Virus record (IMG/VR): IMGVR_UViG_3300035703_000009
Location: 124,001-188,000 of that record
DNA: 64,000 nt
Reading direction: 5' to 3' (one strand)
The translations under genes and the position numbers were made by a program. The notes below the pieces were generated by a model. It made no database searches and was not told where the DNA came from. It was given only the letters and a program-made list of their open reading frames with translations. Positions 38,854 to 64,000 of the stretch are shown in pieces (position 1 is the first letter of the stretch; each line of letters opens with the position of its first letter).

Positions 38854-38908
38854 TCTCGTCACTATTTAACCAGAAATAGAGATAAATAAAAAAAATAAGC
38901 TCTACGAA

Positions 38909-40507
38909 ATGACTAACTTCGTAAAAAACGTTCTAACTGAACTAAAAACTAACGAAACACTTAAAACGCAACCATTGGTTAAGATTCTCACACAATCGAT
39001 AGAAAAGTCGATCGTGCTGGGAGAAAGCGAAGCCAGCGTTTATCATAACCTAAAGACCGGGCTTGCTGCTGTTAACGAGCAAGTAAAGGATGCAAGCTTA
39101 TCTGCGATCCTAGAACAATTTAGCAAAAACGAGGTCACCACTGATTCTAAGTATGCTGCTCTTGCAAAAGAGGTAAACTTGGCTGCCCGAATAGGTGCAG
39201 TAAAAGCAACTAAAGCATACTCTGATCCGACTGTAAAGTCCATCGTTGAATCTTTTGAAAAGGCTATCGCGAGCGGAGCTCCAGATTTCTTAGGCTGCTC
39301 TGATTTTATTAGAGTATTTGAAAAGTACTCATACAATCCAGAAGTAAAGGCCGAAATCACAAAAGTTAACGATTACCTGGTAGAAAACGAAGCTAAGATT
39401 CACATGCTACACGCGATCAATTACTTTGAGTCACTAAGAACTCCTCTTTACACAGGATTGATCTCTGACTTAAAGGAAATGTTGGTCAATGAGAATTATA
39501 CAGCAGACATCCTCAAGCTAAAGTATGGCACCATGGTTCCAGCATTAACTCCTTTGATCCAGTCTCTACGTGTGGTTGAATCTAAGTCAACTGGAGCTTT
39601 TACCCTAGGTGAAGGAACAGTTGAGACTAAGATTAGCAACCTAATTGCTCCAGCAGTTAAGACTGAAGACGGAGTGATTGTCTATGCAGATAATCGATTT
39701 CTTTCGATCAGAGAAGCCAAAGGCTTAACTGGAAACGAGATCAAAGTTCACCTGGACGAGAACTACAAGATCGCTGACTTTAACCCAGAATACGTAAAGT
39801 CAACTCACCCTGATTTTTATGCTCTATGCGAAGCATTTGCAACTCTCGGTTTCAGCAAGACATCTGATCAATTAGGAGTTGAGAGCACTGCTATTCGTAG
39901 CTTTAAGCTCGCATTCAAGATGAACGAAAGCCATGAACTGGACGTTTATATCAATGACAATAAAGTTGAGTCTCTCGACAAGGTAAACGTTTCTGAGTCC
40001 CTAGTTTTTGAAAACACCGGAATAAAAGAAAGAGTTTCACGCCTCATCGAAAAGTCTAGCGAGATCTGTAACTTTGAGTTCATTAAAGAAGCGACCAACG
40101 ATCGCTTGCTTAAGGACGCAATTGTCTTAAACCTAAACGACACATATTTCGTTTGTGAAAAATTAAACACAGCAGATCGCAAGTGGTTTGGAGTAGACGA
40201 ATACCAATTATATGAATTTTTTGCACGTAACTTTGGCTACGACATTAGCTCAGTATTCAAAACCAAGATCGAAGAAACAGTCGCTGAGATCCAAAAGATC
40301 GAGGAGACAAAGAAGAACATACTAGCGAACATCGAAAAACTTGAGACATCTGTTGCTAAGTTAAACGAAACCTGCACATCAAAGGGATTGGACCCATCTG
40401 AAGTAAGCGAACTTGAAGCAATTAAAGAAGACATCGAAAGGAAGATTCACGAACTCAAACAAAGCTACATTGCAATCGATCTTTACAAAAAAAAAGAATT
40501 AGCCTAA
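38909..40507 (+). CDS. Probable prohead core/scaffold-type protein; may be extended to 40746 by a -1 frameshift
   Basis: Helical, many (L/V)xE sites, C-terminal coiled coil; A9 run at 40487-40495. Confidence 0.55.
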   Translation: MTNFVKNVLTELKTNETLKTQPLVKILTQSIEKSIVLGESEASVYHNLKTGLAAVNEQVKDASLSAILEQFSKNEVTTDSKYAALAKEVNLAARIGAVKATKAYSDPTVKSIVESFEKAIASGAPDFLGCSDFIRVFEKYSYNPEVKAEITKVNDYLVENEAKIHMLHAINYFESLRTPLYTGLISDLKEMLVNENYTADILKLKYGTMVPALTPLIQSLRVVESKSTGAFTLGEGTVETKISNLIAPAVKTEDGVIVYADNRFLSIREAKGLTGNEIKVHLDENYKIADFNPEYVKSTHPDFYALCEAFATLGFSKTSDQLGVESTAIRSFKLAFKMNESHELDVYINDNKVESLDKVNVSESLVFENTGIKERVSRLIEKSSEICNFEFIKEATNDRLLKDAIVLNLNDTYFVCEKLNTADRKWFGVDEYQLYEFFARNFGYDISSVFKTKIEETVAEIQKIEETKKNILANIEKLETSVAKLNETCTSKGLDPSEVSELEAIKEDIERKIHELKQSYIAIDLYKKKELA

Positions 40508-40746
40508 ACGAACAAGCAGACGGTTATCAAAGCAAGAACAAGTTCAAGATCGGCGAAACAGTAGAGGTAGGTGAAAGGTTAGGCAAAGTAACATCAATCA
40601 ATAACCTTAGCGGAGAATACTTGGTCATGATAGGTTCAAAGAACCACAGATTTAAGGAAGCCCAACTAGCTAAAGCGATTCAAAAGAAAGCCAAGAAAAA
40701 AGACCTTACTCGCAAGAAGAAACCAGCCGAAACGAAAAATATTTAA
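40495..40746 (+). CDS. Start-less -1-frame extension (SH3/KOW-like domain plus Lys-rich tail) of the 38909 ORF
   Basis: Open frame RISLNEQADGYQSKNKFKIGETVEVGERLGKVTSIN...KKKPAETKNI* with no upstream start codon; a terminator follows its stop. Confidence 0.6.
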   Translation, partial: RISLNEQADGYQSKNKFKIGETVEVGERLGKVTSINNLSGEYLVMIGSKNHRFKEAQLAKAIQKKAKKKDLTRKKKPAETKNI

Positions 40747-40769
40747 AGGGAGCACTAGCTCCCTTTTTT
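40745..40769 (+). terminator. Intrinsic terminator
   Basis: AAAGGGAGC-acta-GCTCCCTTT followed by a T-run. Confidence 0.8.
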
Positions 40770-40798
40770 ATTTTAGCCAGTTTTTAGTATTGTAATCA

Positions 40799-40826
40799 AA
40801 ACTGACCACCCAGAATACAGTATAAT
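40799..40826 (+). promoter_or_regulatory. Bipartite promoter motif AAACY-N15/16-GTAWAA (representative copy)
   Basis: Also at 47822, 51088, 60392 (+) and 11450, 24257, 60446 (-). Confidence 0.55.
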
Positions 40827-40842
40827 AACTAAACACCATTTG

Positions 40843-41661
40843 ATGGACACAAGAATAGACTTTGAAACCGCAAAAAAGTACGACCAGATCGACTTAATTG
40901 ACCGCCAGACAGATTACGGTACTGTAAAACTTTATGTACGCAAAGGACTTAACGAGGTAAAATACAACGTTGGTCAAAACTTCACTAAGAAAGCAAACGG
41001 TGGCGAATACATCGCGCCATTTGTGTCAAAAAAGATCGGAAGCCCACTAAACGTCAATGAAGCTCTCAATAAAGAGGACGTGTGGTTGGACATCGGTGGC
41101 CACCTGGGATTCTTTGCTATTCGCATGCTAAAACAGTTTCCAAAGATTCGTAAGGTCGTGTCATATGAAGCTCTGCCGCATAACGTTAGCTTTGAATTAG
41201 AGAACGTGAAGCTCAATGGAATGGAGGCTCAGTGTGAGGTCATCCAAAAGGCCATCGTTCCAAACGACTCACCGACAATCAGTTTCTTTATTTCCAGCGA
41301 TTCTGGCAAGCACTCAATCCTGCCGGTAAAGGGTCGTGAGAACATCACCGTGCCTGCTATCAACATCAATGATGCCATCAAGCAAAGTGGAGCGACCGCC
41401 ATCAAGATGGATGTAGAAGGTGCCGAATATCATCTTATTAAGGCGGTAACTGACTGGTCACAGATCAGAGTTGCCGTAGTCGAGTGGCACTTTAATGCAA
41501 TGCGAACCTTGACCAAGGACAAGAATTATCGAGTTACCTTGTTCCAAGAGATCATCGACATCTTCAAGCAGAACGGTTTCGATACTATTCGCACACTACC
41601 TAACGTTGAGTACGGTAAGAACTTCATCACTCACTTTGTAGCCATCAAGACCGGTGCATAA
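40843..41661 (+). CDS. FkbM-family SAM-dependent methyltransferase
   Basis: LDIGGHLG, SYEA and IKMDVEGAE motifs. Confidence 0.85.
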   Translation: MDTRIDFETAKKYDQIDLIDRQTDYGTVKLYVRKGLNEVKYNVGQNFTKKANGGEYIAPFVSKKIGSPLNVNEALNKEDVWLDIGGHLGFFAIRMLKQFPKIRKVVSYEALPHNVSFELENVKLNGMEAQCEVIQKAIVPNDSPTISFFISSDSGKHSILPVKGRENITVPAININDAIKQSGATAIKMDVEGAEYHLIKAVTDWSQIRVAVVEWHFNAMRTLTKDKNYRVTLFQEIIDIFKQNGFDTIRTLPNVEYGKNFITHFVAIKTGA

Positions 41662-42070
41662 CAGTCCATATGGCCTACTCCAAGAAATATACCACGAGCA
41701 TCCATGGCGGACGCTCGTGTGTTGTATTATGCTAAACTGCACTTCTCGTAAGCAAGTAGATCGGGTTCGCGATGAGTTTTTTCGTATGTACCCAGATCCA
41801 TTAGAAGCTGAACGCGCAGATCCTACCGAAATGGCCGAGTTAATCGCTCCGCTTGGTTTCAAGAACAGGCGAACTAAGACCATAATACGCTTCTCGAGTG
41901 ACTGGATGACCCTGGATTGGTCCGAACCCAGCGAATTATATGGAATAGGTAAGTACGGACAGGATTCATGGGAGATATTCCAAAAGGGAAACCTGGATGT
42001 GGAGCCAACTGACGGCGTCCTTAACAAATACTTGGCTTGGGCTAGAACTCAACCTCAAAACCAGATATAA
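41654..42070 (+). CDS. HhH-GPD DNA glycosylase, MBD4-like
   Basis: PWRTLVCCIMLNCT..KQ, PLGF..RR and ELYGIGKYGQDSWEIF. Confidence 0.8.
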   Translation: MHNSPYGLLQEIYHEHPWRTLVCCIMLNCTSRKQVDRVRDEFFRMYPDPLEAERADPTEMAELIAPLGFKNRRTKTIIRFSSDWMTLDWSEPSELYGIGKYGQDSWEIFQKGNLDVEPTDGVLNKYLAWARTQPQNQI

Positions 42071-52224: not shown

Positions 52225-53345
52225 ACACACTAGACAAACAATATCAAGACCTACTTGCTACTATTTTAGAACATGGCGTGACCAAGAAGGATCGCACTGG
52301 AACTGGAACTACCTCCATTTTCGGTTACACCATTCGACACAACATGAAGCAAGGATTTCCATTACTTACCACCAAGAAAATTCACTTTAAATCAGTAGTA
52401 ACTGAACTGCTTTGGTTTCTACAAGGTAGAACAGATTTGAAATGGTTGTTGGATAATGGTAATACTATTTGGGTCGGAGACGCATATAAGCATTTCACTA
52501 ATGAAGTTAATTATATTATTGATGGATATAGGAGCGGCGATATTTTAGGAACGCAACCACATATTGAAGCATTGTTTAGTAACACAAATGAACTCATACC
52601 TCTTACGAAAGAAGAATTCATCAACAAAATCAAAACAGATGATGAGTTTGCTAAGAAGTGGGGGTCACTCGGAAAGATATATGGACATCAATGGAGAAGT
52701 TGGGGCGAAAGAAGGCACGATTCAATCGATAACGAGTACGTTATTGGTATAGACCAAATCCAAAACTTAATTAACAAGTTAAAAAACAATCCTGATGATA
52801 GAAGAATGATGGTCACCGCTTGGAACCCGTCAGAAGTTGAAAGTTGTGTTTTGCCACCTTGTCATTATGGGTTTCAAGTTTATACAAGAGAGCTAACGTG
52901 GGAAGAACAAGTTCAATGGGTTATGAAGAACACTAACGTTGAATGGGAAAATCTTTATATAGTAGAAGAAATAGCCAAACCGTCTACCCCAACTAGAGCA
53001 ATCTCTTTAATGTGGAATCAGAGAAGTGTGGATACACCACTTGGTTTACCATTCAATATAGCATCTTATGGTTTGCTATTAGAAATCATTGCTAAGATTG
53101 TGAATATGGTTCCTGATGAATTAATCGGTAATTTAGGTGATACGCACATTTATTCAAATCAAATTGATGGGTGTAAAGAACAATTAACACGAGAAGTGTT
53201 TGATCTACCTACATTAGTTCATTCAAAAACTGATGACTTTTGGAGATCATTTGATGTTAGTCTATTTGGTCATTTAGATACTAACGATTTTAGAGTCGAA
53301 AATTACAAATCAGGTGATACAATTCATTTCCCTCTTAGCAACTAA
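52221..53345 (+). CDS. thyA: Thymidylate synthase
   Basis: DRTGTGT, FPLLTTKK, ELLWFL, YGHQWR, LPPCH, QRSVD..LGLPFNIASY and GDTHIY. Confidence 0.95.
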   Translation: MNTLDKQYQDLLATILEHGVTKKDRTGTGTTSIFGYTIRHNMKQGFPLLTTKKIHFKSVVTELLWFLQGRTDLKWLLDNGNTIWVGDAYKHFTNEVNYIIDGYRSGDILGTQPHIEALFSNTNELIPLTKEEFINKIKTDDEFAKKWGSLGKIYGHQWRSWGERRHDSIDNEYVIGIDQIQNLINKLKNNPDDRRMMVTAWNPSEVESCVLPPCHYGFQVYTRELTWEEQVQWVMKNTNVEWENLYIVEEIAKPSTPTRAISLMWNQRSVDTPLGLPFNIASYGLLLEIIAKIVNMVPDELIGNLGDTHIYSNQIDGCKEQLTREVFDLPTLVHSKTDDFWRSFDVSLFGHLDTNDFRVENYKSGDTIHFPLSN

Positions 53346-60944: not shown

Positions 60945-61016
60945 GGTCCATTGGTGTAGTGGCTAACATTCATCCCTGTCACGGATGCGCCGCGAGTTCG
61001 ATTCTCGCATGGACCG
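60945..61016 (+). tRNA. tRNA-Asp(GTC)
   Basis: Full cloverleaf: GGTCCAT/ATGGACC, CATCC-CTGTCAC-GGATG, GCGAG-TTCGATT-CTCGC. Confidence 0.92.
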
Positions 61017-61028
61017 CAGAAACATTTT

Positions 61029-61040
61029 GTTCTTTGAAAA
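61029..61040 (+). promoter_or_regulatory. boxA-like antitermination motif GTTCTTTGAAAA
   Basis: Identical 12-mer also at 63742, both directly before structured RNAs. Confidence 0.5.
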
Positions 61041-61043
61041 AAT

Positions 61044-61116
61044 GCCGAGGTAGCTCAGTTGGGAGAGCATGAGACTCATAAACTCAAGGTCAGCAGTTCG
61101 ATCCTGCTTCTCGGTA
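61044..61116 (+). tRNA. tRNA-Met/Ile2 (CAT)
   Basis: GCCGAGG/TCTCGGT acceptor, GCTC/GAGC D-stem, CTCATAA loop, AGCAG-TTCGATC-CTGCT. Confidence 0.88.
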
Positions 61117-61129
61117 CGAAAGATAAAAT

Positions 61130-61203
61130 TGCGGGGTAGAGAAGCGGTCATCTCGGAAGTCTCATAAGCTTCAGATCGGAGGTTCGAATCCTCCCTCACG
61201 CAA
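61130..61203 (+). tRNA. Initiator-like tRNA-Met(CAT), atypical
   Basis: TGCGGGG 5' end like fMet tRNAs; bulged base in the 3' acceptor strand (CTCACGCA); anticodon stem lacks the three G-C pairs. Confidence 0.7.
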
Positions 61204-61207
61204 CTAA

Positions 61208-61361
61208 GTCAGTAGCAACGTAAAAGTTACTTCGAAATCCATCATAAGGAAGGGGTCGGTGGTTCGAATCCATCTCTCGGCACTATATTAAAAACTCATG
61301 CCGAGATAGCTCAGTGGTCTAGAGCACTTTAAAGAAAAACACTTTTGCACTTTTCTCTGAC
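61208..61361 (+). ncRNA. Y-RNA (YrlA)-like RNA A: scaffold plus permuted tRNA (CAT loop, T arm, closed acceptor, D arm)
   Basis: GTCAG/CTGAC and GTAAAAGT/ACTTTTGC stems; GGTGG-TTCGAAT-CCATC; TCTCGGCA/TGCCGAGA; GCTC/GAGC. Confidence 0.8.
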
Positions 61362-61401
61362 AAAATTTTAAAAGTTCGATCACGTGTAGTACTGTATCAA
61401 C

Positions 61402-61770
61402 ATGAATGCACTAACCGACCGTCTGCTGGAACTGCCAGCCACAATCGCAGAAAATCAACGTCAGATCTTAGATTTGAGCGGTGACCTGCAACTGGTCTCA
61501 AACAACATCGTTGAGATTGAGACCAAGATAAAACTTTCTATTGCCGCAAAAGTAGATGATGCTGGCAAGAAAGTTTACTCGAATGCCGACGCAAGGGAAG
61601 CTGCCTTTGCAGAAGCTGCTGCTGACGACTTTGAGCTCATTGAGCTTAAGGACGCTCGTGACAAGAAGGAGAAGAGCCTTCAGTTGCTAAAGATCGAGTA
61701 TGAAAAGCTTAGCAACGAACAGCGAAACATCCGTGCAACGTTATATTTTCTTGCCGGAAAGAGCGAATAA
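61402..61770 (+). CDS. Coiled-coil hypothetical protein
   Basis: 122 aa, helical hairpin with KVYSNADARE turn. Confidence 0.65.
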   Translation: MNALTDRLLELPATIAENQRQILDLSGDLQLVSNNIVEIETKIKLSIAAKVDDAGKKVYSNADAREAAFAEAAADDFELIELKDARDKKEKSLQLLKIEYEKLSNEQRNIRATLYFLAGKSE

Positions 61771-61863
61771 AAAGTTTTCAATAAACTGAAAATGTTACGA
61801 TAAACCAAGTAAGTTAATCAAACACAAGTAAGTTTAAAAAAATAAAAACCTTGTACTAAAATT

Positions 61864-63597
61864 ATGGCAAAGTTCAGAAACCAAAATCTTCGTAGCACGC
61901 TAGCTGGTATGCAGCCTGATGCGAAGTTGGTTGAAGCAGCAAAGCTGCCGAAGCCAGACACCAAGAATCGTCAAGGAAACGACGCGTACTCACTCGACAA
62001 GTGGCTCCGTCTCTTGACAATGCTCAACACTCTCAAGCTTGAGAGCCAGTTCTATCGTTCTGAGAACGAGACGATGCGCGAGCTCAAAGCGTTAGTCGAT
62101 GAGTGTGCTAAGGAGGACGCTTACTTTGTTGCTCAAGCAATCGTGTACTCACGTTGCGTAGGTGAAGGAATGCGTTCAGTAAACCACTTGGCTGCAAGCT
62201 ACCTAGCGCCACACTGCGCTGGTCAAGAATGGGCAAAGCGTTTCTACTCACTGTGGAACAAGAAGACCCAATCTGGCGGTACCCTCTTCAGACCTGACGA
62301 CATGTCAGAGATCGTTGCATGCTTTTCAGCAATGAATAAGACTGCAGTGACCAACGCGATGAAGAAGGGCTTCAAGGAAGCTCTCGAAAAGATGGACGCG
62401 TACTCGCTCCTCAAGTACAAGAGCTCTCTCGTTGACGTGATCAACCTCGTTCACCCTGACGCTAAGACAGCGAAGGCAAAGGTTGAGATCTCAGCTGACT
62501 CGTACTTGGCCAAGCTACGTGAACTTGAAAAGGCAACTAAGGACAAGACAAAGAGCAAGGCTCTACTCGAAAAGATTAAGCTCAACGAAAGTGCCAGCGG
62601 AACCGTCAAGGTTTCTGCACTGGATGCGATCATGCTGGGTCTATCAGCGTCAGCTGACACCTGGGAGGTAGCACAATCCGATGCAGGCCAAGAGGTTGCA
62701 AAGGCAGTGAAGGAAGGCAAGCTGACCGAGACTCAGGCTGCGGAAGTCCTCAAGGAAGCAAAGGCTGAAAACTGGGACGCCCTCTTAACCGAAGGCAAGC
62801 TCGGAGTTCTGGCCGCTCTACGAAACATCCGTAACATCGTGAAGACCGCGTCAAAGGGAACAACGGTAGACAAGCTCTGCGCATTGCTCTCAGACGGCGA
62901 GGCTATCCGTAAGGGTAAGATCATGCCGTATCAAATTGACATGGCTCACGAAGTGGTCAATGCTGAGTTCAGCAACGTCGACTCTCGTAAGATTGCGCAA
63001 GCTCTCTTAAAGGGTTACGAAGCTGCAGTGCCTAACCTCGCTGAAGCCCTACCAGGCAGAACTCTCGTGATGGTTGACTTCTCTGGCTCAATGTCGACCA
63101 TGGTTGTTGACCCTAACCGCAAGACCAGCTACCGCAGCTCTTGCATGGATAAGGCAGCCCTGATCGCAGCAACAGTCGCAAAGGCAACCAACGCAGACAT
63201 CATCCGCTTCGGCTCCTCTGCAGAATACGTCAGCTGGAATGCAAATTCCGATGTGTTCTCAATCGCAAAGGCAATGAAGCGTGACATGGGAGGTACCAGC
63301 CTAGCCTCTGCATGGATGGCGGCACAAAGATCTGGACGTAAGTACGATCGAGTGTTCATTCTATCAGACAACGAATGTAACAGTGGCTCAAGCTACAAGG
63401 CGTACGAAAGCTACACCAAGGCATGCGGAAGCCCATACGTTTACTCAGTTGACCTGGCAGCGTACGGAACGACCCAACTCGCAGGAGACAAGGTTCGCTT
63501 CTACTACGGCTATGGTTACTCAATGTTCGATGACATCGCGAAGAGCGAGTTCAACCCGAACTACCACCTCGAAAAGGTGAAGAAGATCGTGATCTAA
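61864..63597 (+). CDS. rsr: Ro60/Rsr TROVE-domain RNA-binding protein with vWA domain
   Basis: N..G..AY, YSLLKY, L.DVINLVHP, TWE, ALRNIRNI; MIDAS DFSGS...GGT...LSDNE. Confidence 0.9.
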   Translation: MAKFRNQNLRSTLAGMQPDAKLVEAAKLPKPDTKNRQGNDAYSLDKWLRLLTMLNTLKLESQFYRSENETMRELKALVDECAKEDAYFVAQAIVYSRCVGEGMRSVNHLAASYLAPHCAGQEWAKRFYSLWNKKTQSGGTLFRPDDMSEIVACFSAMNKTAVTNAMKKGFKEALEKMDAYSLLKYKSSLVDVINLVHPDAKTAKAKVEISADSYLAKLRELEKATKDKTKSKALLEKIKLNESASGTVKVSALDAIMLGLSASADTWEVAQSDAGQEVAKAVKEGKLTETQAAEVLKEAKAENWDALLTEGKLGVLAALRNIRNIVKTASKGTTVDKLCALLSDGEAIRKGKIMPYQIDMAHEVVNAEFSNVDSRKIAQALLKGYEAAVPNLAEALPGRTLVMVDFSGSMSTMVVDPNRKTSYRSSCMDKAALIAATVAKATNADIIRFGSSAEYVSWNANSDVFSIAKAMKRDMGGTSLASAWMAAQRSGRKYDRVFILSDNECNSGSSYKAYESYTKACGSPYVYSVDLAAYGTTQLAGDKVRFYYGYGYSMFDDIAKSEFNPNYHLEKVKKIVI

Positions 63598-63611
63598 TCA
63601 GTCACGGCACT

Positions 63612-63641
63612 GGCTAGGAAGAGGGTGACCTCTTCCTAGCC
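63612..63641 (+). other. Perfect 13-bp hairpin with GTGA (GNRA) loop after rsr
   Basis: GGCTAGGAAGAGG-GTGA-CCTCTTCCTAGCC with no U-tract. Confidence 0.7.
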
Positions 63642-63649
63642 GCTAAAAA

Positions 63650-63730
63650 ACCGAGTGGCAAGTTAAGAGTTACTTCTAACATCAATTTGAAATGACTACA
63701 CAAGCACACTCTTAGCAACATTACCTCGGT
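63650..63730 (+). ncRNA. Y-RNA-like RNA B: scaffold with short non-tRNA insert
   Basis: ACCGAG/CTCGGT, TGGCAA, GTTAAGAGT/ACTCTTAGC, TACTTC...ACAC. Confidence 0.7.
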
Positions 63731-63741
63731 AAATTTTTAAA

Positions 63742-63753
63742 GTTCTTTGAAAA
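63742..63753 (+). promoter_or_regulatory. boxA-like motif GTTCTTTGAAAA
   Basis: Second copy, directly before RNA C. Confidence 0.5.
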
Positions 63754-63759
63754 ATAAAA

Positions 63760-63885
63760 ATCAGGTAGCAACGTAAGGGTTACTTCTAGCTCAATTGGTC
63801 GAGCAATTTTCTGCAAAAAAATGGGTTGTGGGTTCGATCCCCACGAAGCGGCGAAAGCCGTACACCCTTGCAACTTTCTCCTGAT
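63760..63885 (+). ncRNA. Y-RNA-like RNA C: scaffold plus unpermuted tRNA body (D arm, GCA anticodon arm, T arm) and a GNRA hairpin
   Basis: ATCAGG/CCTGAT, GTAAGGGT/ACCCTTGC; GCTC/GAGC; ATTTT-CTGCAAA-AAAAT; GTGGG-TTCGATC-CCCAC; CGGC-GAAA-GCCG. Confidence 0.8.
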
Positions 63886-63896
63886 AACTTAAATTA

Positions 63897-64000
63897 AAGC
63901 GTAGCAAGACTAGAGTTACTTCGCATATTGGTTCGAATCCAATATTTGGCACCTGCCAAATTAGACAAATGGTTAAGTCGACGGTCTCATAAACTGTTTT
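63897..64000 (+). ncRNA. Y-RNA-like RNA D (truncated): scaffold plus permuted tRNA (T arm, closed acceptor, D arm, CAT anticodon arm)
   Basis: TAGCAAG...GAGTTACTTC; ATTGG-TTCGAAT-CCAAT; ATTTGGC-ACCT-GCCAAAT; GAC/GTC; ACGGT-CTCATAA-ACTGT. Confidence 0.75.

What the first reader, a model, noticed from the sequence alone, without database searches (positions are those of the whole stretch)
40484..40769. Probable programmed -1 frameshift or slippage adding an SH3-like basic domain to a head protein
The 532-aa ORF ends TAC AAA AAA AAA GAA TTA GCC TAA. A -1 shift on the A9 run enters an 83-codon frame (RISLNEQ...FKIGETVEVGERLGKVTSINNLSGEYLVMIG...KKKPAETKNI). This frame has no start codon before the domain, looks protein-like, begins with an LNE protease-type site, and is followed immediately by the operon terminator. 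Inference: two isoforms are made, one with a nucleic-acid-binding tail.
Basis: partly seen in the sequence, partly recalled or inferred. Interest (0 to 1): 0.62.

Follow-up and report, generated by a model that had tools for sequence, protein, structure and literature searches.

The report
Slippery A-run extends a phage protein
Nine A's near the end of a late gene of an uncultured T4-like jumbo phage let part of the product continue in the -1 frame into a small SH3-like basic domain, and 27 distinct relatives keep the same layout, so it is a real programmed recoding site of a known kind in a new protein family.

Summary
ORF 38909-40507 (532 aa) ends TAC AAA AAA AAA GAA TTA GCC TAA. The -1 frame then runs 83 codons to 40746 with no ATG/GTG/TTG before the domain core, and an intrinsic terminator follows.

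It is not an assembly error. Contigs from three independent studies cross the run without an indel. Twenty-seven distinct homologous loci, with large-protein identity from 89% down to about 33%, keep a run of 8-10 A's (9 in 25), a 0-frame stop 0-5 codons later, and the same -1-frame domain without a start codon. That domain has dN/dS of 0.07-0.25.

Forty relatives without this layout never have such a run. They encode the domain as a separate gene with its own start, or carry other in-frame C-terminal cargo, or have neither.

The tail folds as an SH3-like (KOW/Tudor-type) barrel followed by a basic end. A [L/I/V]-x-E motif just after the junction has an invariant Glu. The genome has T4-type head genes, including a gp21-like protease.

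I read this as programmed -1 recoding that makes a 532-aa and a 612-aa isoform. RNA-polymerase slippage on A9 seems the likelier route, and ribosomal -1 slippage is a close rival. "Head protein" and "nucleic-acid binding" remain inferences.

The parts
38880..38899 (+). Late/structural promoter-like motif (AGATAAATAA + A-run + TAAG), about 27 nt before the ATG
   Evidence: The motif is invariant upstream of the gene in all 20 family loci inspected, from every architecture. In the phage's own genome ATAAATAA..AAAA occurs 34 times, and 33 of these are followed by an ORF start 16-32 nt downstream. The genes it precedes include tail sheath, a tail-tube-like gene, the protease-scaffold gene, the baseplate wedge gene and this gene.
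38909..40507 (+). 0-frame ORF, 532 aa (the short isoform, or 'carrier'): N-terminal helical domain, central beta-rich domain, C-terminal helical hairpin
   Evidence: 81 homologs, nearly all 526-540 aa. AF2 model has pLDDT 86, pTM 0.69. No known family or fold. Structural relatives are only uncharacterised phage proteins.
40487..40495 (+). A9 slip site (codons K527-K529). It contains the heptamer A_AAA_AAA at 40489-40495
   Evidence: The run is 9 nt in 25 of 27 distinct frameshift-type loci, 8 in one and 10 in one. It is absent from all 40 non-frameshift relatives. A9 is confirmed by three independent contigs.
40500..40507 (+). Stops that close the two other frames just after the run: TAG 40500-40502 (+1 frame) and TAA 40505-40507 (0 frame)
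   Evidence: The 0-frame stop lies 0-5 codons after the run in all frameshift-type loci. A +1-frame stop follows the run within a few codons in the window and in L002-L005, and a TAG just after the run is seen in most junctions of alignment A3.
40495..40746 (+). -1-frame extension: 83 codons plus stop. The long isoform is residues 1-529 plus 83, i.e. 612 aa
   Evidence: tblastn conservation across loci has E from 1e-43 to 1e-5. dN/dS is 0.07-0.25. In seven lineages a -1-frame TAA is formed by the T before the run plus its first two A's, so entry into this frame is possible only inside the run.
40504..40512 (+). L-N-E motif in the -1 frame, a putative prohead-protease site (cut after Glu)
   Evidence: The Glu is invariant, and a [L/I/V] sits two residues before it in all 22 aligned tails, including the stand-alone proteins. 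The same motif opens the in-frame extensions of other relatives. The genome encodes a Peptidase_S77 domain. T4 gp21 cuts Alt at ITE-6 and LTE-619 (PMC5694885). Cleavage here is inferred.
40558..40674 (+). SH3-like five-stranded beta-barrel (KOW/Tudor type)
   Evidence: AF2 gives pLDDT 91-93 over this stretch. Foldseek: NusG C-terminal domain 1nz9, rmsd 1.3 A over 54 columns, E 1.5e-2; best E overall 4.5e-3. VIA-align: Z 7.4-7.0 to Tudor and NusG KOW domains. No Pfam hit above threshold.
40675..40743 (+). Lys/Arg-rich, predicted disordered C-terminal end of the tail
   Evidence: pLDDT about 67-70. K-rich in all lineages.
40745..40774 (+). Intrinsic terminator (GC hairpin plus T-run) overlapping the -1-frame stop
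   Evidence: An equivalent hairpin plus T-run follows the tail stop in the relatives of the window clade and the phase-2 clade.

Best explanation
The A9 run at 40487-40495 is a programmed -1 recoding site. Most product ends three codons later as the 532-aa short form. A set fraction continues in the -1 frame and becomes a 612-aa long form. That form carries a short linker, an SH3-like barrel and a basic end. I think the main route is slippage of a bacterial-type RNA polymerase on the nine A's. This adds one A to part of the mRNAs, which are then translated normally. Transcripts with other numbers of extra A's meet the stops in the 0 and +1 frames and give the short form. Ribosomal -1 slippage on A_AAA_AAA probably contributes as well. 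The gene is a late gene. By inference, the long form enters the prohead and the gp21-like protease cuts after L-N-E, releasing the basic SH3-like domain as a cargo peptide. Shown: the layout, its conservation, purifying selection on the tail, the fold prediction, and the presence of the protease gene. Inferred: which polymerase or ribosome event does the shift, the isoform ratio, cleavage, location in the head, and what the tail binds.
For: Recoding is real. 27 distinct loci keep run + near 0-frame stop + startless -1 domain. Large-protein identity in these loci ranges from 89% to about 33%. The association is complete: all 27 frameshift-type rows have runs of at least 8 A's, and none of the 40 other rows does. 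The in-frame-extension group does not even keep KKK, so the run is not a protein-level requirement. In seven lineages a -1-frame TAA at the 5' edge of the run confines entry to the run. Tail dN/dS is 0.07-0.25. Three independent contigs show A9. No in-frame fusion to this tail exists among 81 homologs or about 108 loci.

Points that favour polymerase slippage. The run length is held at 9 in both codon phases. In every lineage where the run starts one base earlier in the codon frame (phase 2), the codon before the run ends in A (TTA, CTA or TCA). This holds although A-ending Leu codons make up only 21-65% of Leu codons in those genes. No conserved RNA structure lies downstream. Both other frames close within a few codons, as in Thermus dnaX (PMC5009743). 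Runs of 9 A/T are the known efficient slippage length for bacterial RNA polymerase (PMC5009743). A_AAA_AAA is a weak ribosomal site in E. coli (same review). The phage carries tRNA-Lys(CUU) as well as tRNA-Lys(UUU).

Late-gene and head context.
Against: There is no RNA or protein evidence. The only RNA contig covers 38909-39134 and not the run. Every A-run of 8 or more also contains a canonical -1 heptamer in the right phase, A_AAA_AAA or A_AAA_AAG, so ribosomal slippage explains the same layout. The A before the run in phase-2 lineages would also create a second heptamer. One lineage has only A8 (L009). E. coli RNA polymerase slips less on coding-strand A-runs than on T-runs (PMC6260861). Which polymerase transcribes this gene is not known. 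The lineages counted are related, so the codon statistics overstate independence. The head location of the carrier rests only on a promoter-like motif and a short, common peptide motif.
Confidence: 0.5

Rival explanations
1. The products are the same, but they are made only by programmed -1 ribosomal frameshifting. tRNA-Lys in the P and A sites slips back on A_AAA_AAA (40489-40495), or on A_AAA_AAG in relatives. mRNA editing by the polymerase is negligible.
For: A canonical X_XXY_YYZ heptamer lies in the 0-frame phase in every frameshift-type locus. Phase-2 relatives have the classic dnaX heptamer A_AAA_AAG, and in two lineages it is directly followed by a stop. L009 works with A8. Low-efficiency -1 shifting without a stimulator is common in phage G/GT genes (PMC5009743).
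Against: No conserved downstream structure was found, and I saw no SD-like element in the 20 nt before the run. The run is kept at 9, longer than the heptamer needs in phase-2 lineages. A9 in a transcribed region is expected to cause polymerase slippage in any case (PMC5009743). The phage encodes tRNA-Lys(CUU), which in E. coli lowers shifting on AAG; that last point is from my own knowledge.
Confidence: 0.38
2. The tail is an independent small gene. It is translated from a non-canonical start codon, or by termination-reinitiation after the 0-frame stop, and is not fused to the 532-aa protein.
For: In other clades the homologous domain is a separate gene. Its start overlaps or directly follows the stop of the large gene (TAATG in L027, AAATGA in L026, TAA GTG in L088), or lies about 105 nt downstream. 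So coupled, separate expression is the state in those relatives.
Against: No ATG, GTG or TTG occurs before the barrel core in any frameshift-type locus. No near-cognate codon is conserved either: the position is ATT in the window, GCT in L002 and ACT in L004. The roughly 17-residue leader of the stand-alone proteins is missing. That would not explain why an A-run of 8 or more is kept in exactly these lineages and in no others.
Confidence: 0.04
3. The run is a DNA-level contingency locus. Replication slippage makes subpopulations with a fused (one more A) or unfused gene, and the polymorphism rather than recoding gives the two forms.
For: Homopolymers of 9 are mutable. Run lengths of 8, 9 and 10 occur among relatives.
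Against: The A8 and A10 variants keep the same frame layout: A10 arises from a synonymous CTT to CTA change. None of about 45 frameshift-type assemblies from many samples, and none of 81 database proteins, is a fused form. Three independent contigs of this phage all have A9. Contigs cannot show minority variants, so a small subpopulation is not excluded.
Confidence: 0.04
4. This is an artefact or decay: a sequencing or assembly error in a true in-frame fusion, or a recently broken gene.
For: Homopolymers are error-prone in assemblies.
Against: Independent contigs agree. The 0-frame ending KKKEL[A/V]-stop is itself conserved in proteins that are 57-89% identical. The layout persists down to about 33% identity with purifying selection on the tail.
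Confidence: 0.01

Closest known systems
Thermus thermophilus dnaX (tau/gamma made by transcriptional slippage on a run of nine)
   Same: A run of 9 A's in the coding strand, nearby stops in two of the three frames, and two products with a common N-terminal part, with no need for an RNA stimulator (PMC5009743).
   Different: In Thermus the long product is in the 0 frame and slippage gives the short one. Here the 0 frame gives the short product and one extra A gives the long one. The gene family is unrelated. Slippage is not shown here.
E. coli dnaX -1 ribosomal frameshift (A_AAA_AAG)
   Same: The same slippery heptamer is present in the phase-2 relatives, and A_AAA_AAA in the window. The shift is decoded by tRNA-Lys and lies near the end of the shorter product.
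   Different: dnaX has an upstream SD-like element and a downstream stem-loop. No conserved structure was found here. In dnaX the shifted frame stops at once, whereas here it adds an 83-residue domain.
C-terminal extensions of phage structural proteins by frameshifting (T7 capsid 10A/10B, lambda tail chaperone G/GT, capsid and tail proteins of Listeria phages such as PSA; from my own knowledge and PMC5009743)
   Same: A shift close to the 3' end of a late phage gene, a minor longer isoform with an added C-terminal domain, and a conserved two-frame layout.
   Different: The protein family is new and has no assigned function. The slip site is a long homopolymer rather than a minimal heptamer. 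The added part is an SH3-like basic domain behind a putative protease site. Relatives encode the same domain as a free-standing gene.
T4 internal proteins and Alt (capsid-targeting leader, cut by gp21 after [L/I]-x-E)
   Same: The genome has T4-type capsid, portal and protease genes. There is an invariant [L/I/V]-x-E just before the cargo domain. The stand-alone homologs have a short conserved N-terminal leader ending in S-L-K-E. T4 Alt loses a C-terminal piece at LTE-619 (PMC5694885).
   Different: There is no sequence similarity to T4 internal proteins. Packaging and cleavage are untested. Here the cargo would be attached to the C-terminus of a large carrier by recoding, rather than targeted by an N-terminal leader.
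KOW / Tudor / SH3-like small beta-barrels (NusG C-terminal domain, Tudor domains)
   Same: A predicted five-stranded barrel of the same size and topology.
   Different: The matches are weak (E above 1e-3, Z about 7), as is usual for small barrels. No Pfam family reaches its threshold. A shared fold says nothing about the ligand.

Membership tests
Programmed -1 ribosomal frameshift site (X_XXY_YYZ class) | Slippery heptamer in the 0-frame phase | tested here: met
   A_AAA_AAA at 40489-40495. A_AAA_AAA or A_AAA_AAG is present in all 27 frameshift-type loci.
Programmed -1 ribosomal frameshift site (X_XXY_YYZ class) | Overlapping -1 ORF without its own start, conserved as coding sequence | tested here: met
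   (dN/dS 0.07-0.25).
Programmed -1 ribosomal frameshift site (X_XXY_YYZ class) | Stimulatory element (downstream hairpin or pseudoknot, or upstream SD-like sequence) | tested here: not met
   RNAalifold on 17 junctions gave 0 conserved pairs. I saw no SD-like sequence in the 20 nt upstream. Such elements are common but not obligatory.
Programmed -1 ribosomal frameshift site (X_XXY_YYZ class) | Trans-frame protein made from unedited mRNA | not testable with these tools
   This needs proteomics together with RNA sequencing.
Programmed transcriptional slippage (run of 9 or more A/T) | Homopolymer of about 9 or more, kept at nucleotide level | tested here: met
   A9 in 25 of 27 distinct loci, A8 in one and A10 in one. 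The length is kept in two codon phases. AAG is avoided although it is the preferred Lys codon in this window.
Programmed transcriptional slippage (run of 9 or more A/T) | Heterogeneous run length in mRNA but not in DNA | tested here: inconclusive
   DNA contigs from three studies show A9. The single RNA contig ends at 39134 and does not reach the run. No raw reads were on offer.
Programmed transcriptional slippage (run of 9 or more A/T) | The frames not used for the extension close right after the run | tested here: met
   In the window the 0-frame stop is 3 codons after the run and the +1-frame TAG closes that frame within two codons. The 0-frame stop is 0-5 codons after the run in all frameshift-type loci. 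A near +1-frame stop was checked only in the window and L002-L005.
SH3-like / KOW-Tudor small beta-barrel | Five-stranded barrel fold | tested here: met
   AF2 pLDDT 91-93 over residues 21-60 of the tail. Foldseek probability 1.0, rmsd 1.3-2.5 A to NusG C-terminal and Tudor domains. VIA-align Z 7.4-6. This is a prediction only.
SH3-like / KOW-Tudor small beta-barrel | Sequence membership in a curated KOW, Tudor or SH3 family | tested here: not met
   No Pfam or PHROG hit reaches its threshold. Relatives carry no Pfam domain.
Substrates of a T4-type prohead protease | [L/I]-x-E site at a domain boundary, conserved | tested here: met
   The Glu is invariant and the residue two before it is hydrophobic in 22 of 22 tails. 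The same motif sits at the start of in-frame extensions.
Substrates of a T4-type prohead protease | A gp21-like protease is encoded by the phage | tested here: met
   Peptidase_S77 scores 43.6 bits, above the cut-off, at genome position 52985-53314. It is fused to a repeat region rich in [L/I/V]-x-E.
Substrates of a T4-type prohead protease | Presence in proheads and cleavage after Glu | not testable with these tools
   No cultured member and no proteome are available.
Phage head (virion) protein | Homology to a known head component, or detection in the virion | tested here: not met
   No family or fold match was found. The only indirect support is the late-promoter-like motif shared with sheath, tube, baseplate and protease genes.

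The most novel reading that the evidence does not exclude
In these T4-like jumbo phages, recoding on the A-run works as a capsid-loading device. It replaces the N-terminal targeting leader that the stand-alone homologs carry, by fusing a fixed fraction of the SH3-like basic cargo to the C-terminus of a late carrier protein. The prohead protease then frees the cargo at [L/I/V]-x-E. The C-terminus of the carrier would be a general docking point, with different lineages attaching different cargo either in frame or by polymerase slippage. This would be a programmed transcriptional slippage site in a phage late gene that sets cargo stoichiometry.
Probability: 0.25. Interest if true: 0.7.

Novelty: new member of a known kind. 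Interest (0 to 1): 0.55.

Why it matters
Gene callers miss the tail completely: no gene is called between the large gene and the methyltransferase in L002 and L003, and only fragments are called in L004 and L005. So a conserved 83-residue domain goes unannotated in a widespread group of lake and marine jumbo phages.

The family offers a natural experiment. The same domain is delivered in three ways: by recoding, as a separate gene with a leader, or replaced by other in-frame cargo. The A-run is present only where recoding is needed.

The site is also well suited to separating polymerase slippage from ribosomal slippage in a phage late gene. If the protease and cargo reading holds, it shows a new way of loading proteins into T4-type heads.

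Tried and rejected
- Pfam and PHROGs on the 532-aa protein, the tail and their neighbours found nothing for the two proteins.
- blastn and tblastn against 50,697 phage records, using the window gene, the tail and two distant homologs, found no match.
- The first scan of viral contigs with the single protein found nothing. The alignment-based scans did find loci.
- A PDB sequence profile gave only coiled-coil noise.
- Foldseek against PDB, VIA-align wide and the Atlas shape search on the large model gave only generic helical-hairpin matches or TM below 0.35. The Atlas feature search gave no usable hit.
- A profile search of the Tenacibaculum phage genomes found no match in PTm1 and a weak one in pT24 (E 2e-6). 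That pT24 gene is annotated 'DNA ligase 1' and lies next to polymerase genes, so it does not help with function.
- A second word search with the tail alignment added eight small unnamed proteins and no Pfam domain.
- RNAalifold found no conserved structure after the run.
- The one RNA library holding part of the stretch covers only 38909-39134 and may contain DNA, so it says nothing about slippage. All runs were held as contigs, so minority run lengths could not be seen.
- The other coding run of nine (minus strand, genome 49060-49068) was checked as a second recoding site and rejected. Its -1 frame stops after 11 codons.
- The TAGTAT motif after the terminator is not enriched genome-wide.
- The large representative search and complex prediction were not used.
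Full report
**What is in the window.**
The window is part of a 207-kb linear IMG/VR virus record, estimated 81% complete. ORF 38909-40507 encodes 532 aa and ends TAC AAA AAA AAA GAA TTA GCC TAA. The A9 run is at 40487-40495.

The -1 frame is open from 40426 to the TAA at 40744-40746. From AGA at 40495 it gives 83 codons. The first ATG/GTG/TTG in that frame is a TTG at 40621, inside the domain. The +1 frame closes at TAG 40500-40502.

A GC hairpin plus T-run at 40745-40774 overlaps the -1-frame stop. There is no terminator-like site after the 0-frame stop.

**Is it an error or chance?**
- AAG is the preferred Lys codon in the window (765 AAG against 516 AAA). This is the only AAA AAA AAA among five KKK triplets, and the run is the longest homopolymer in the window.
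- In the whole genome, runs of nine occur three times. Two are in coding sequence, and both lie within 12 nt of a stop.
- The phage is common in lake-water metagenomes. Contigs from three independent studies cross the run with SNPs around it but no indel.

**Comparative evidence.**
The 532-aa protein has 81 database homologs. Nearly all are 526-540 aa long and two are longer, and none is an in-frame fusion to this tail. I fetched 5 loci by exact protein look-up, 61 from viral contigs and 47 from metagenome contigs.

- The A-run is 9 nt in 25 loci, 8 in L009 and 10 in L105.
- A 0-frame stop follows 0-5 codons later.
- The homologous domain lies in the -1 frame with no start codon before its core.

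These 27 span large-protein identities from 89% to about 33%. They fall into two separate clades of the tree, one of which branches deeply. In seven lineages the T before the run plus its first two A's make a -1-frame TAA. The -1 frame can therefore be entered only inside the run. The tail evolves under purifying selection in the -1 frame, with dN/dS of 0.07-0.25 for informative pairs.

The other 40 genes never have more than 6-7 A's at this position and mix AAA, AAG and AGA. They take three other forms:
- The domain is a separate 83-95-aa gene with its own ATG, TTG or GTG. Its start overlaps or abuts the stop of the large gene (TAATG, AAATGA, TAA GTG), or lies about 105 or about 600 nt downstream.
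- The large protein carries other in-frame C-terminal extensions and does not even keep KKK.
- Neither is present.

The complete association between the run and the need to change frame is the strongest argument that the run is selected as a recoding signal.

**What the parts are.**
The tail model has a five-stranded barrel with pLDDT 91-93, followed by a Lys/Arg-rich, low-confidence end. Its best structural matches are NusG C-terminal KOW domains and Tudor domains: Foldseek E from 4.5e-3 upward with rmsd 1.3-2.5 A, and VIA-align Z 7.4-6. These are normal scores for a small barrel, and there is no Pfam membership. "SH3-like" is therefore fair as a fold description and says nothing about the ligand.

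The large protein models well (pLDDT 86). It has an N-terminal helical domain, a central beta domain and a C-terminal helical hairpin. It matches no solved fold or family. Its structural relatives are only uncharacterised phage proteins, including ones from Tenacibaculum phages PTm1 and pT24. The pT24 gene is a weak sequence match and is annotated, probably wrongly, as a ligase.

**Context.**
The phage has T4-type head genes:
- a gp23-like capsid protein;
- a gp20-like portal;
- a Peptidase_S77 (gp21-like) protease, fused to a repeat region full of [L/I/V]-x-E motifs, including KLNE, SLNE and QLNE.

It also has a T4-superfamily terminase and a baseplate wedge gene. Its nearest cultured relatives are pT24, PTm1 and Sphingomonas phage PAU, at about 30% terminase identity.

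Upstream of the 532-aa gene, about 27 nt before the ATG, lies the motif AGATAAATAA + A-run + TAAG. It is invariant in all 20 family loci inspected, from every architecture. In this genome ATAAATAA..AAAA occurs 34 times, and 33 of these are followed by an ORF start 16-32 nt downstream. Genes it precedes include the tail sheath, a tail-tube-like gene, the protease-scaffold gene, the baseplate wedge gene and a gene with a head-closure-like hit. The motif resembles the T4 late promoter TATAAATA (my own knowledge). So the gene is very probably a late gene, co-regulated with virion genes. That is the best evidence for a structural role, and it is indirect.

**The linker motif.**
Five to nine residues after the junction, all 22 aligned tails have an invariant Glu with Leu, Ile or Val two residues before it (SLNE, SVNE, SLTE, SIGE and so on). 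In the stand-alone proteins this motif ends a conserved leader of about 17 residues, which finishes in S-L-K-E. The unrelated in-frame extensions of other relatives begin with the same kind of motif: VNE, INE, VDE, LNE.

T4 gp21 and its giant-phage relatives all cut after Glu in such short motifs. T4 Alt is trimmed at ITE-6 and at LTE-619, which removes a C-terminal piece (PMC5694885). T4 internal proteins enter the prohead through a short cleavable leader (PMC3012670).

I therefore infer that the carrier's C-terminus is a place where cargo is attached and later cut off by the prohead protease. Two weaker hints point the same way:
- About 90% of homologs have [L/I/V]-x-E at residues 9-11.
- The motif is twice as frequent in the protein as in shuffled versions, 29 against 13.9 +/- 3.1.

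Both hints could simply reflect helical composition.

**Mechanism.**
One extra A in the mRNA and a -1 ribosomal slip give the same 612-aa product, so the sequence alone cannot decide between them.

For polymerase slippage:
- Nine A/T is the length at which bacterial RNA polymerase slips efficiently. Thermus dnaX uses exactly this, with stops in the other frames (PMC5009743).
- The run is kept at nine in two codon phases. In all eight phase-2 lineages the preceding codon ends in A (TTA, CTA or TCA), although A-ending Leu codons are only 21-65% of Leu codons there.
- No RNA structure is conserved after the run.
- A_AAA_AAA is a poor ribosomal site in E. coli.
- The phage encodes tRNA-Lys(CUU) as well as tRNA-Lys(UUU).

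For ribosomal slippage:
- A canonical heptamer is always in phase.
- Phase-2 relatives have A_AAA_AAG, sometimes directly followed by a stop.
- One lineage has only A8.
- Phage frameshift sites without stimulators are common.
- E. coli polymerase slips less on coding-strand A-runs than on T-runs (PMC6260861).

I put polymerase slippage as the main route at about 0.5 and a purely ribosomal route at about 0.38. Both probably occur.

**Rejected readings.**
- Non-canonical initiation or reinitiation has no conserved start-like codon, and it does not explain the run.
- DNA-level phase variation has no fused allele among about 45 assemblies, although contigs cannot exclude a minority.
- Assembly error is refuted.

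**Comparison and novelty.**
A C-terminal extension of a late phage protein by a shift near the 3' end is a known kind. Examples are T7 10A/10B, lambda G/GT and Listeria phage capsid and tail proteins. Poly-A slippage sites are also known, as in Thermus dnaX, insertion sequences and Shigella secretion genes.

What is new here:
- the protein family, found only in uncultured lake and marine jumbo phages;
- the added SH3-like basic module behind a putative protease site;
- the clean evolutionary alternation between recoded, separate-gene and in-frame-cargo forms.

I rate it a new member of a known kind, with moderate interest. It is well suited to testing polymerase against ribosomal slippage, and a possible new way of loading cargo into T4-type heads.

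**Limits.**
There is no transcript or protein evidence, no cultured member, and only assembled contigs for reads. Cleavage, head location, the isoform ratio and the tail's ligand are all inferences.

Noticed in passing
window 38882-38899; also 11466, 22101(-), 24265, 30354, 31900, 34114, 46535, 48369, 53377, 53914, 57260, 60760 (motif starts): A promoter-like motif ATAAATAA..AAAA occurs 34 times in the 207-kb genome. In 33 cases an ORF start follows 16-32 nt downstream on the same strand. It precedes the tail sheath, a tail-tube-like gene, the protease-scaffold gene, the baseplate wedge gene and others. It looks like a T4-late-type promoter class with unusually fixed spacing to the start codon.
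   Followed up: partly
own genome C1:52877-54856 (outside the window; loci L068, L116): The gp21-like prohead protease domain is fused in one 659-aa ORF to a scaffold-like region. That region consists of roughly 11-residue repeats, each with a Y-[L/I/V]-A-E type motif, and sits directly upstream of the gp23-like capsid gene.
   Followed up: partly
own genome C1:49060-49068, minus strand (outside the window): This is the only other coding run of nine. The sequence TTA AAA AAA AAG TAA lies at the very end of a 485-aa ORF. Its -1 frame stops after 11 codons, and the next gene starts 6 nt later in the same frame, so it is not a second extension site. Long runs seem to be tolerated only at gene ends.
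   Followed up: yes
window 60945-64000 and on to genome C1:193629: An array of 35 tRNA genes, including both tRNA-Lys(UUU) and tRNA-Lys(CUU). Four of the tRNAs lie inside the window (Asp, Met, Met, Cys).
   Followed up: partly
L017:3090-3205, L024:3090-3200: In relatives where the tail is a separate gene about 105 nt downstream, a small lipoprotein-like ORF of about 36 aa (hydrophobic leader followed by Cys) is inserted between the large gene and the tail gene. Its ATG overlaps the stop of the large gene.
   Followed up: no
L088:2594-2900: Here the tail gene follows the large gene in the same frame, separated only by TAA, and starts with GTG. Stop-codon readthrough would also give a fusion in this lineage.
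   Followed up: no
window 40781-40800 and the equivalent place in L002-L013, L056, L059: A T-run plus TAGTAT(A/T) motif after the terminator, upstream of the FkbM-type methyltransferase gene, is conserved across relatives. It is not enriched genome-wide; five such sites precede ORFs. It may be a minor -10-like promoter.
   Followed up: partly
L036, L039, L040, L044, L050, L053, L095, L096 (3' ends of the large gene): The in-frame C-terminal extensions in other clades are highly charged, low-complexity peptides (K-rich stretches, DGDGD motifs, Cys-rich repeats). All begin after a [L/I/V]-x-E motif, which suggests a variable cargo position.
   Followed up: partly
Tenacibaculum phage pT24 LC168164.1 144057-146867 (L120, L121): BPT24_169, annotated 'DNA ligase 1' (936 aa), is a weak homolog of the carrier's beta and hairpin region (profile E 2e-6; Foldseek E 4.5e-8). 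The ligase name is probably an annotation artefact.
   Followed up: partly
window 40840-42070: Directly downstream lie an FkbM-family methyltransferase and an HhH-GPD (endonuclease III-like) gene. Their order after the carrier gene is conserved in relatives that are 57-89% identical.
   Followed up: no
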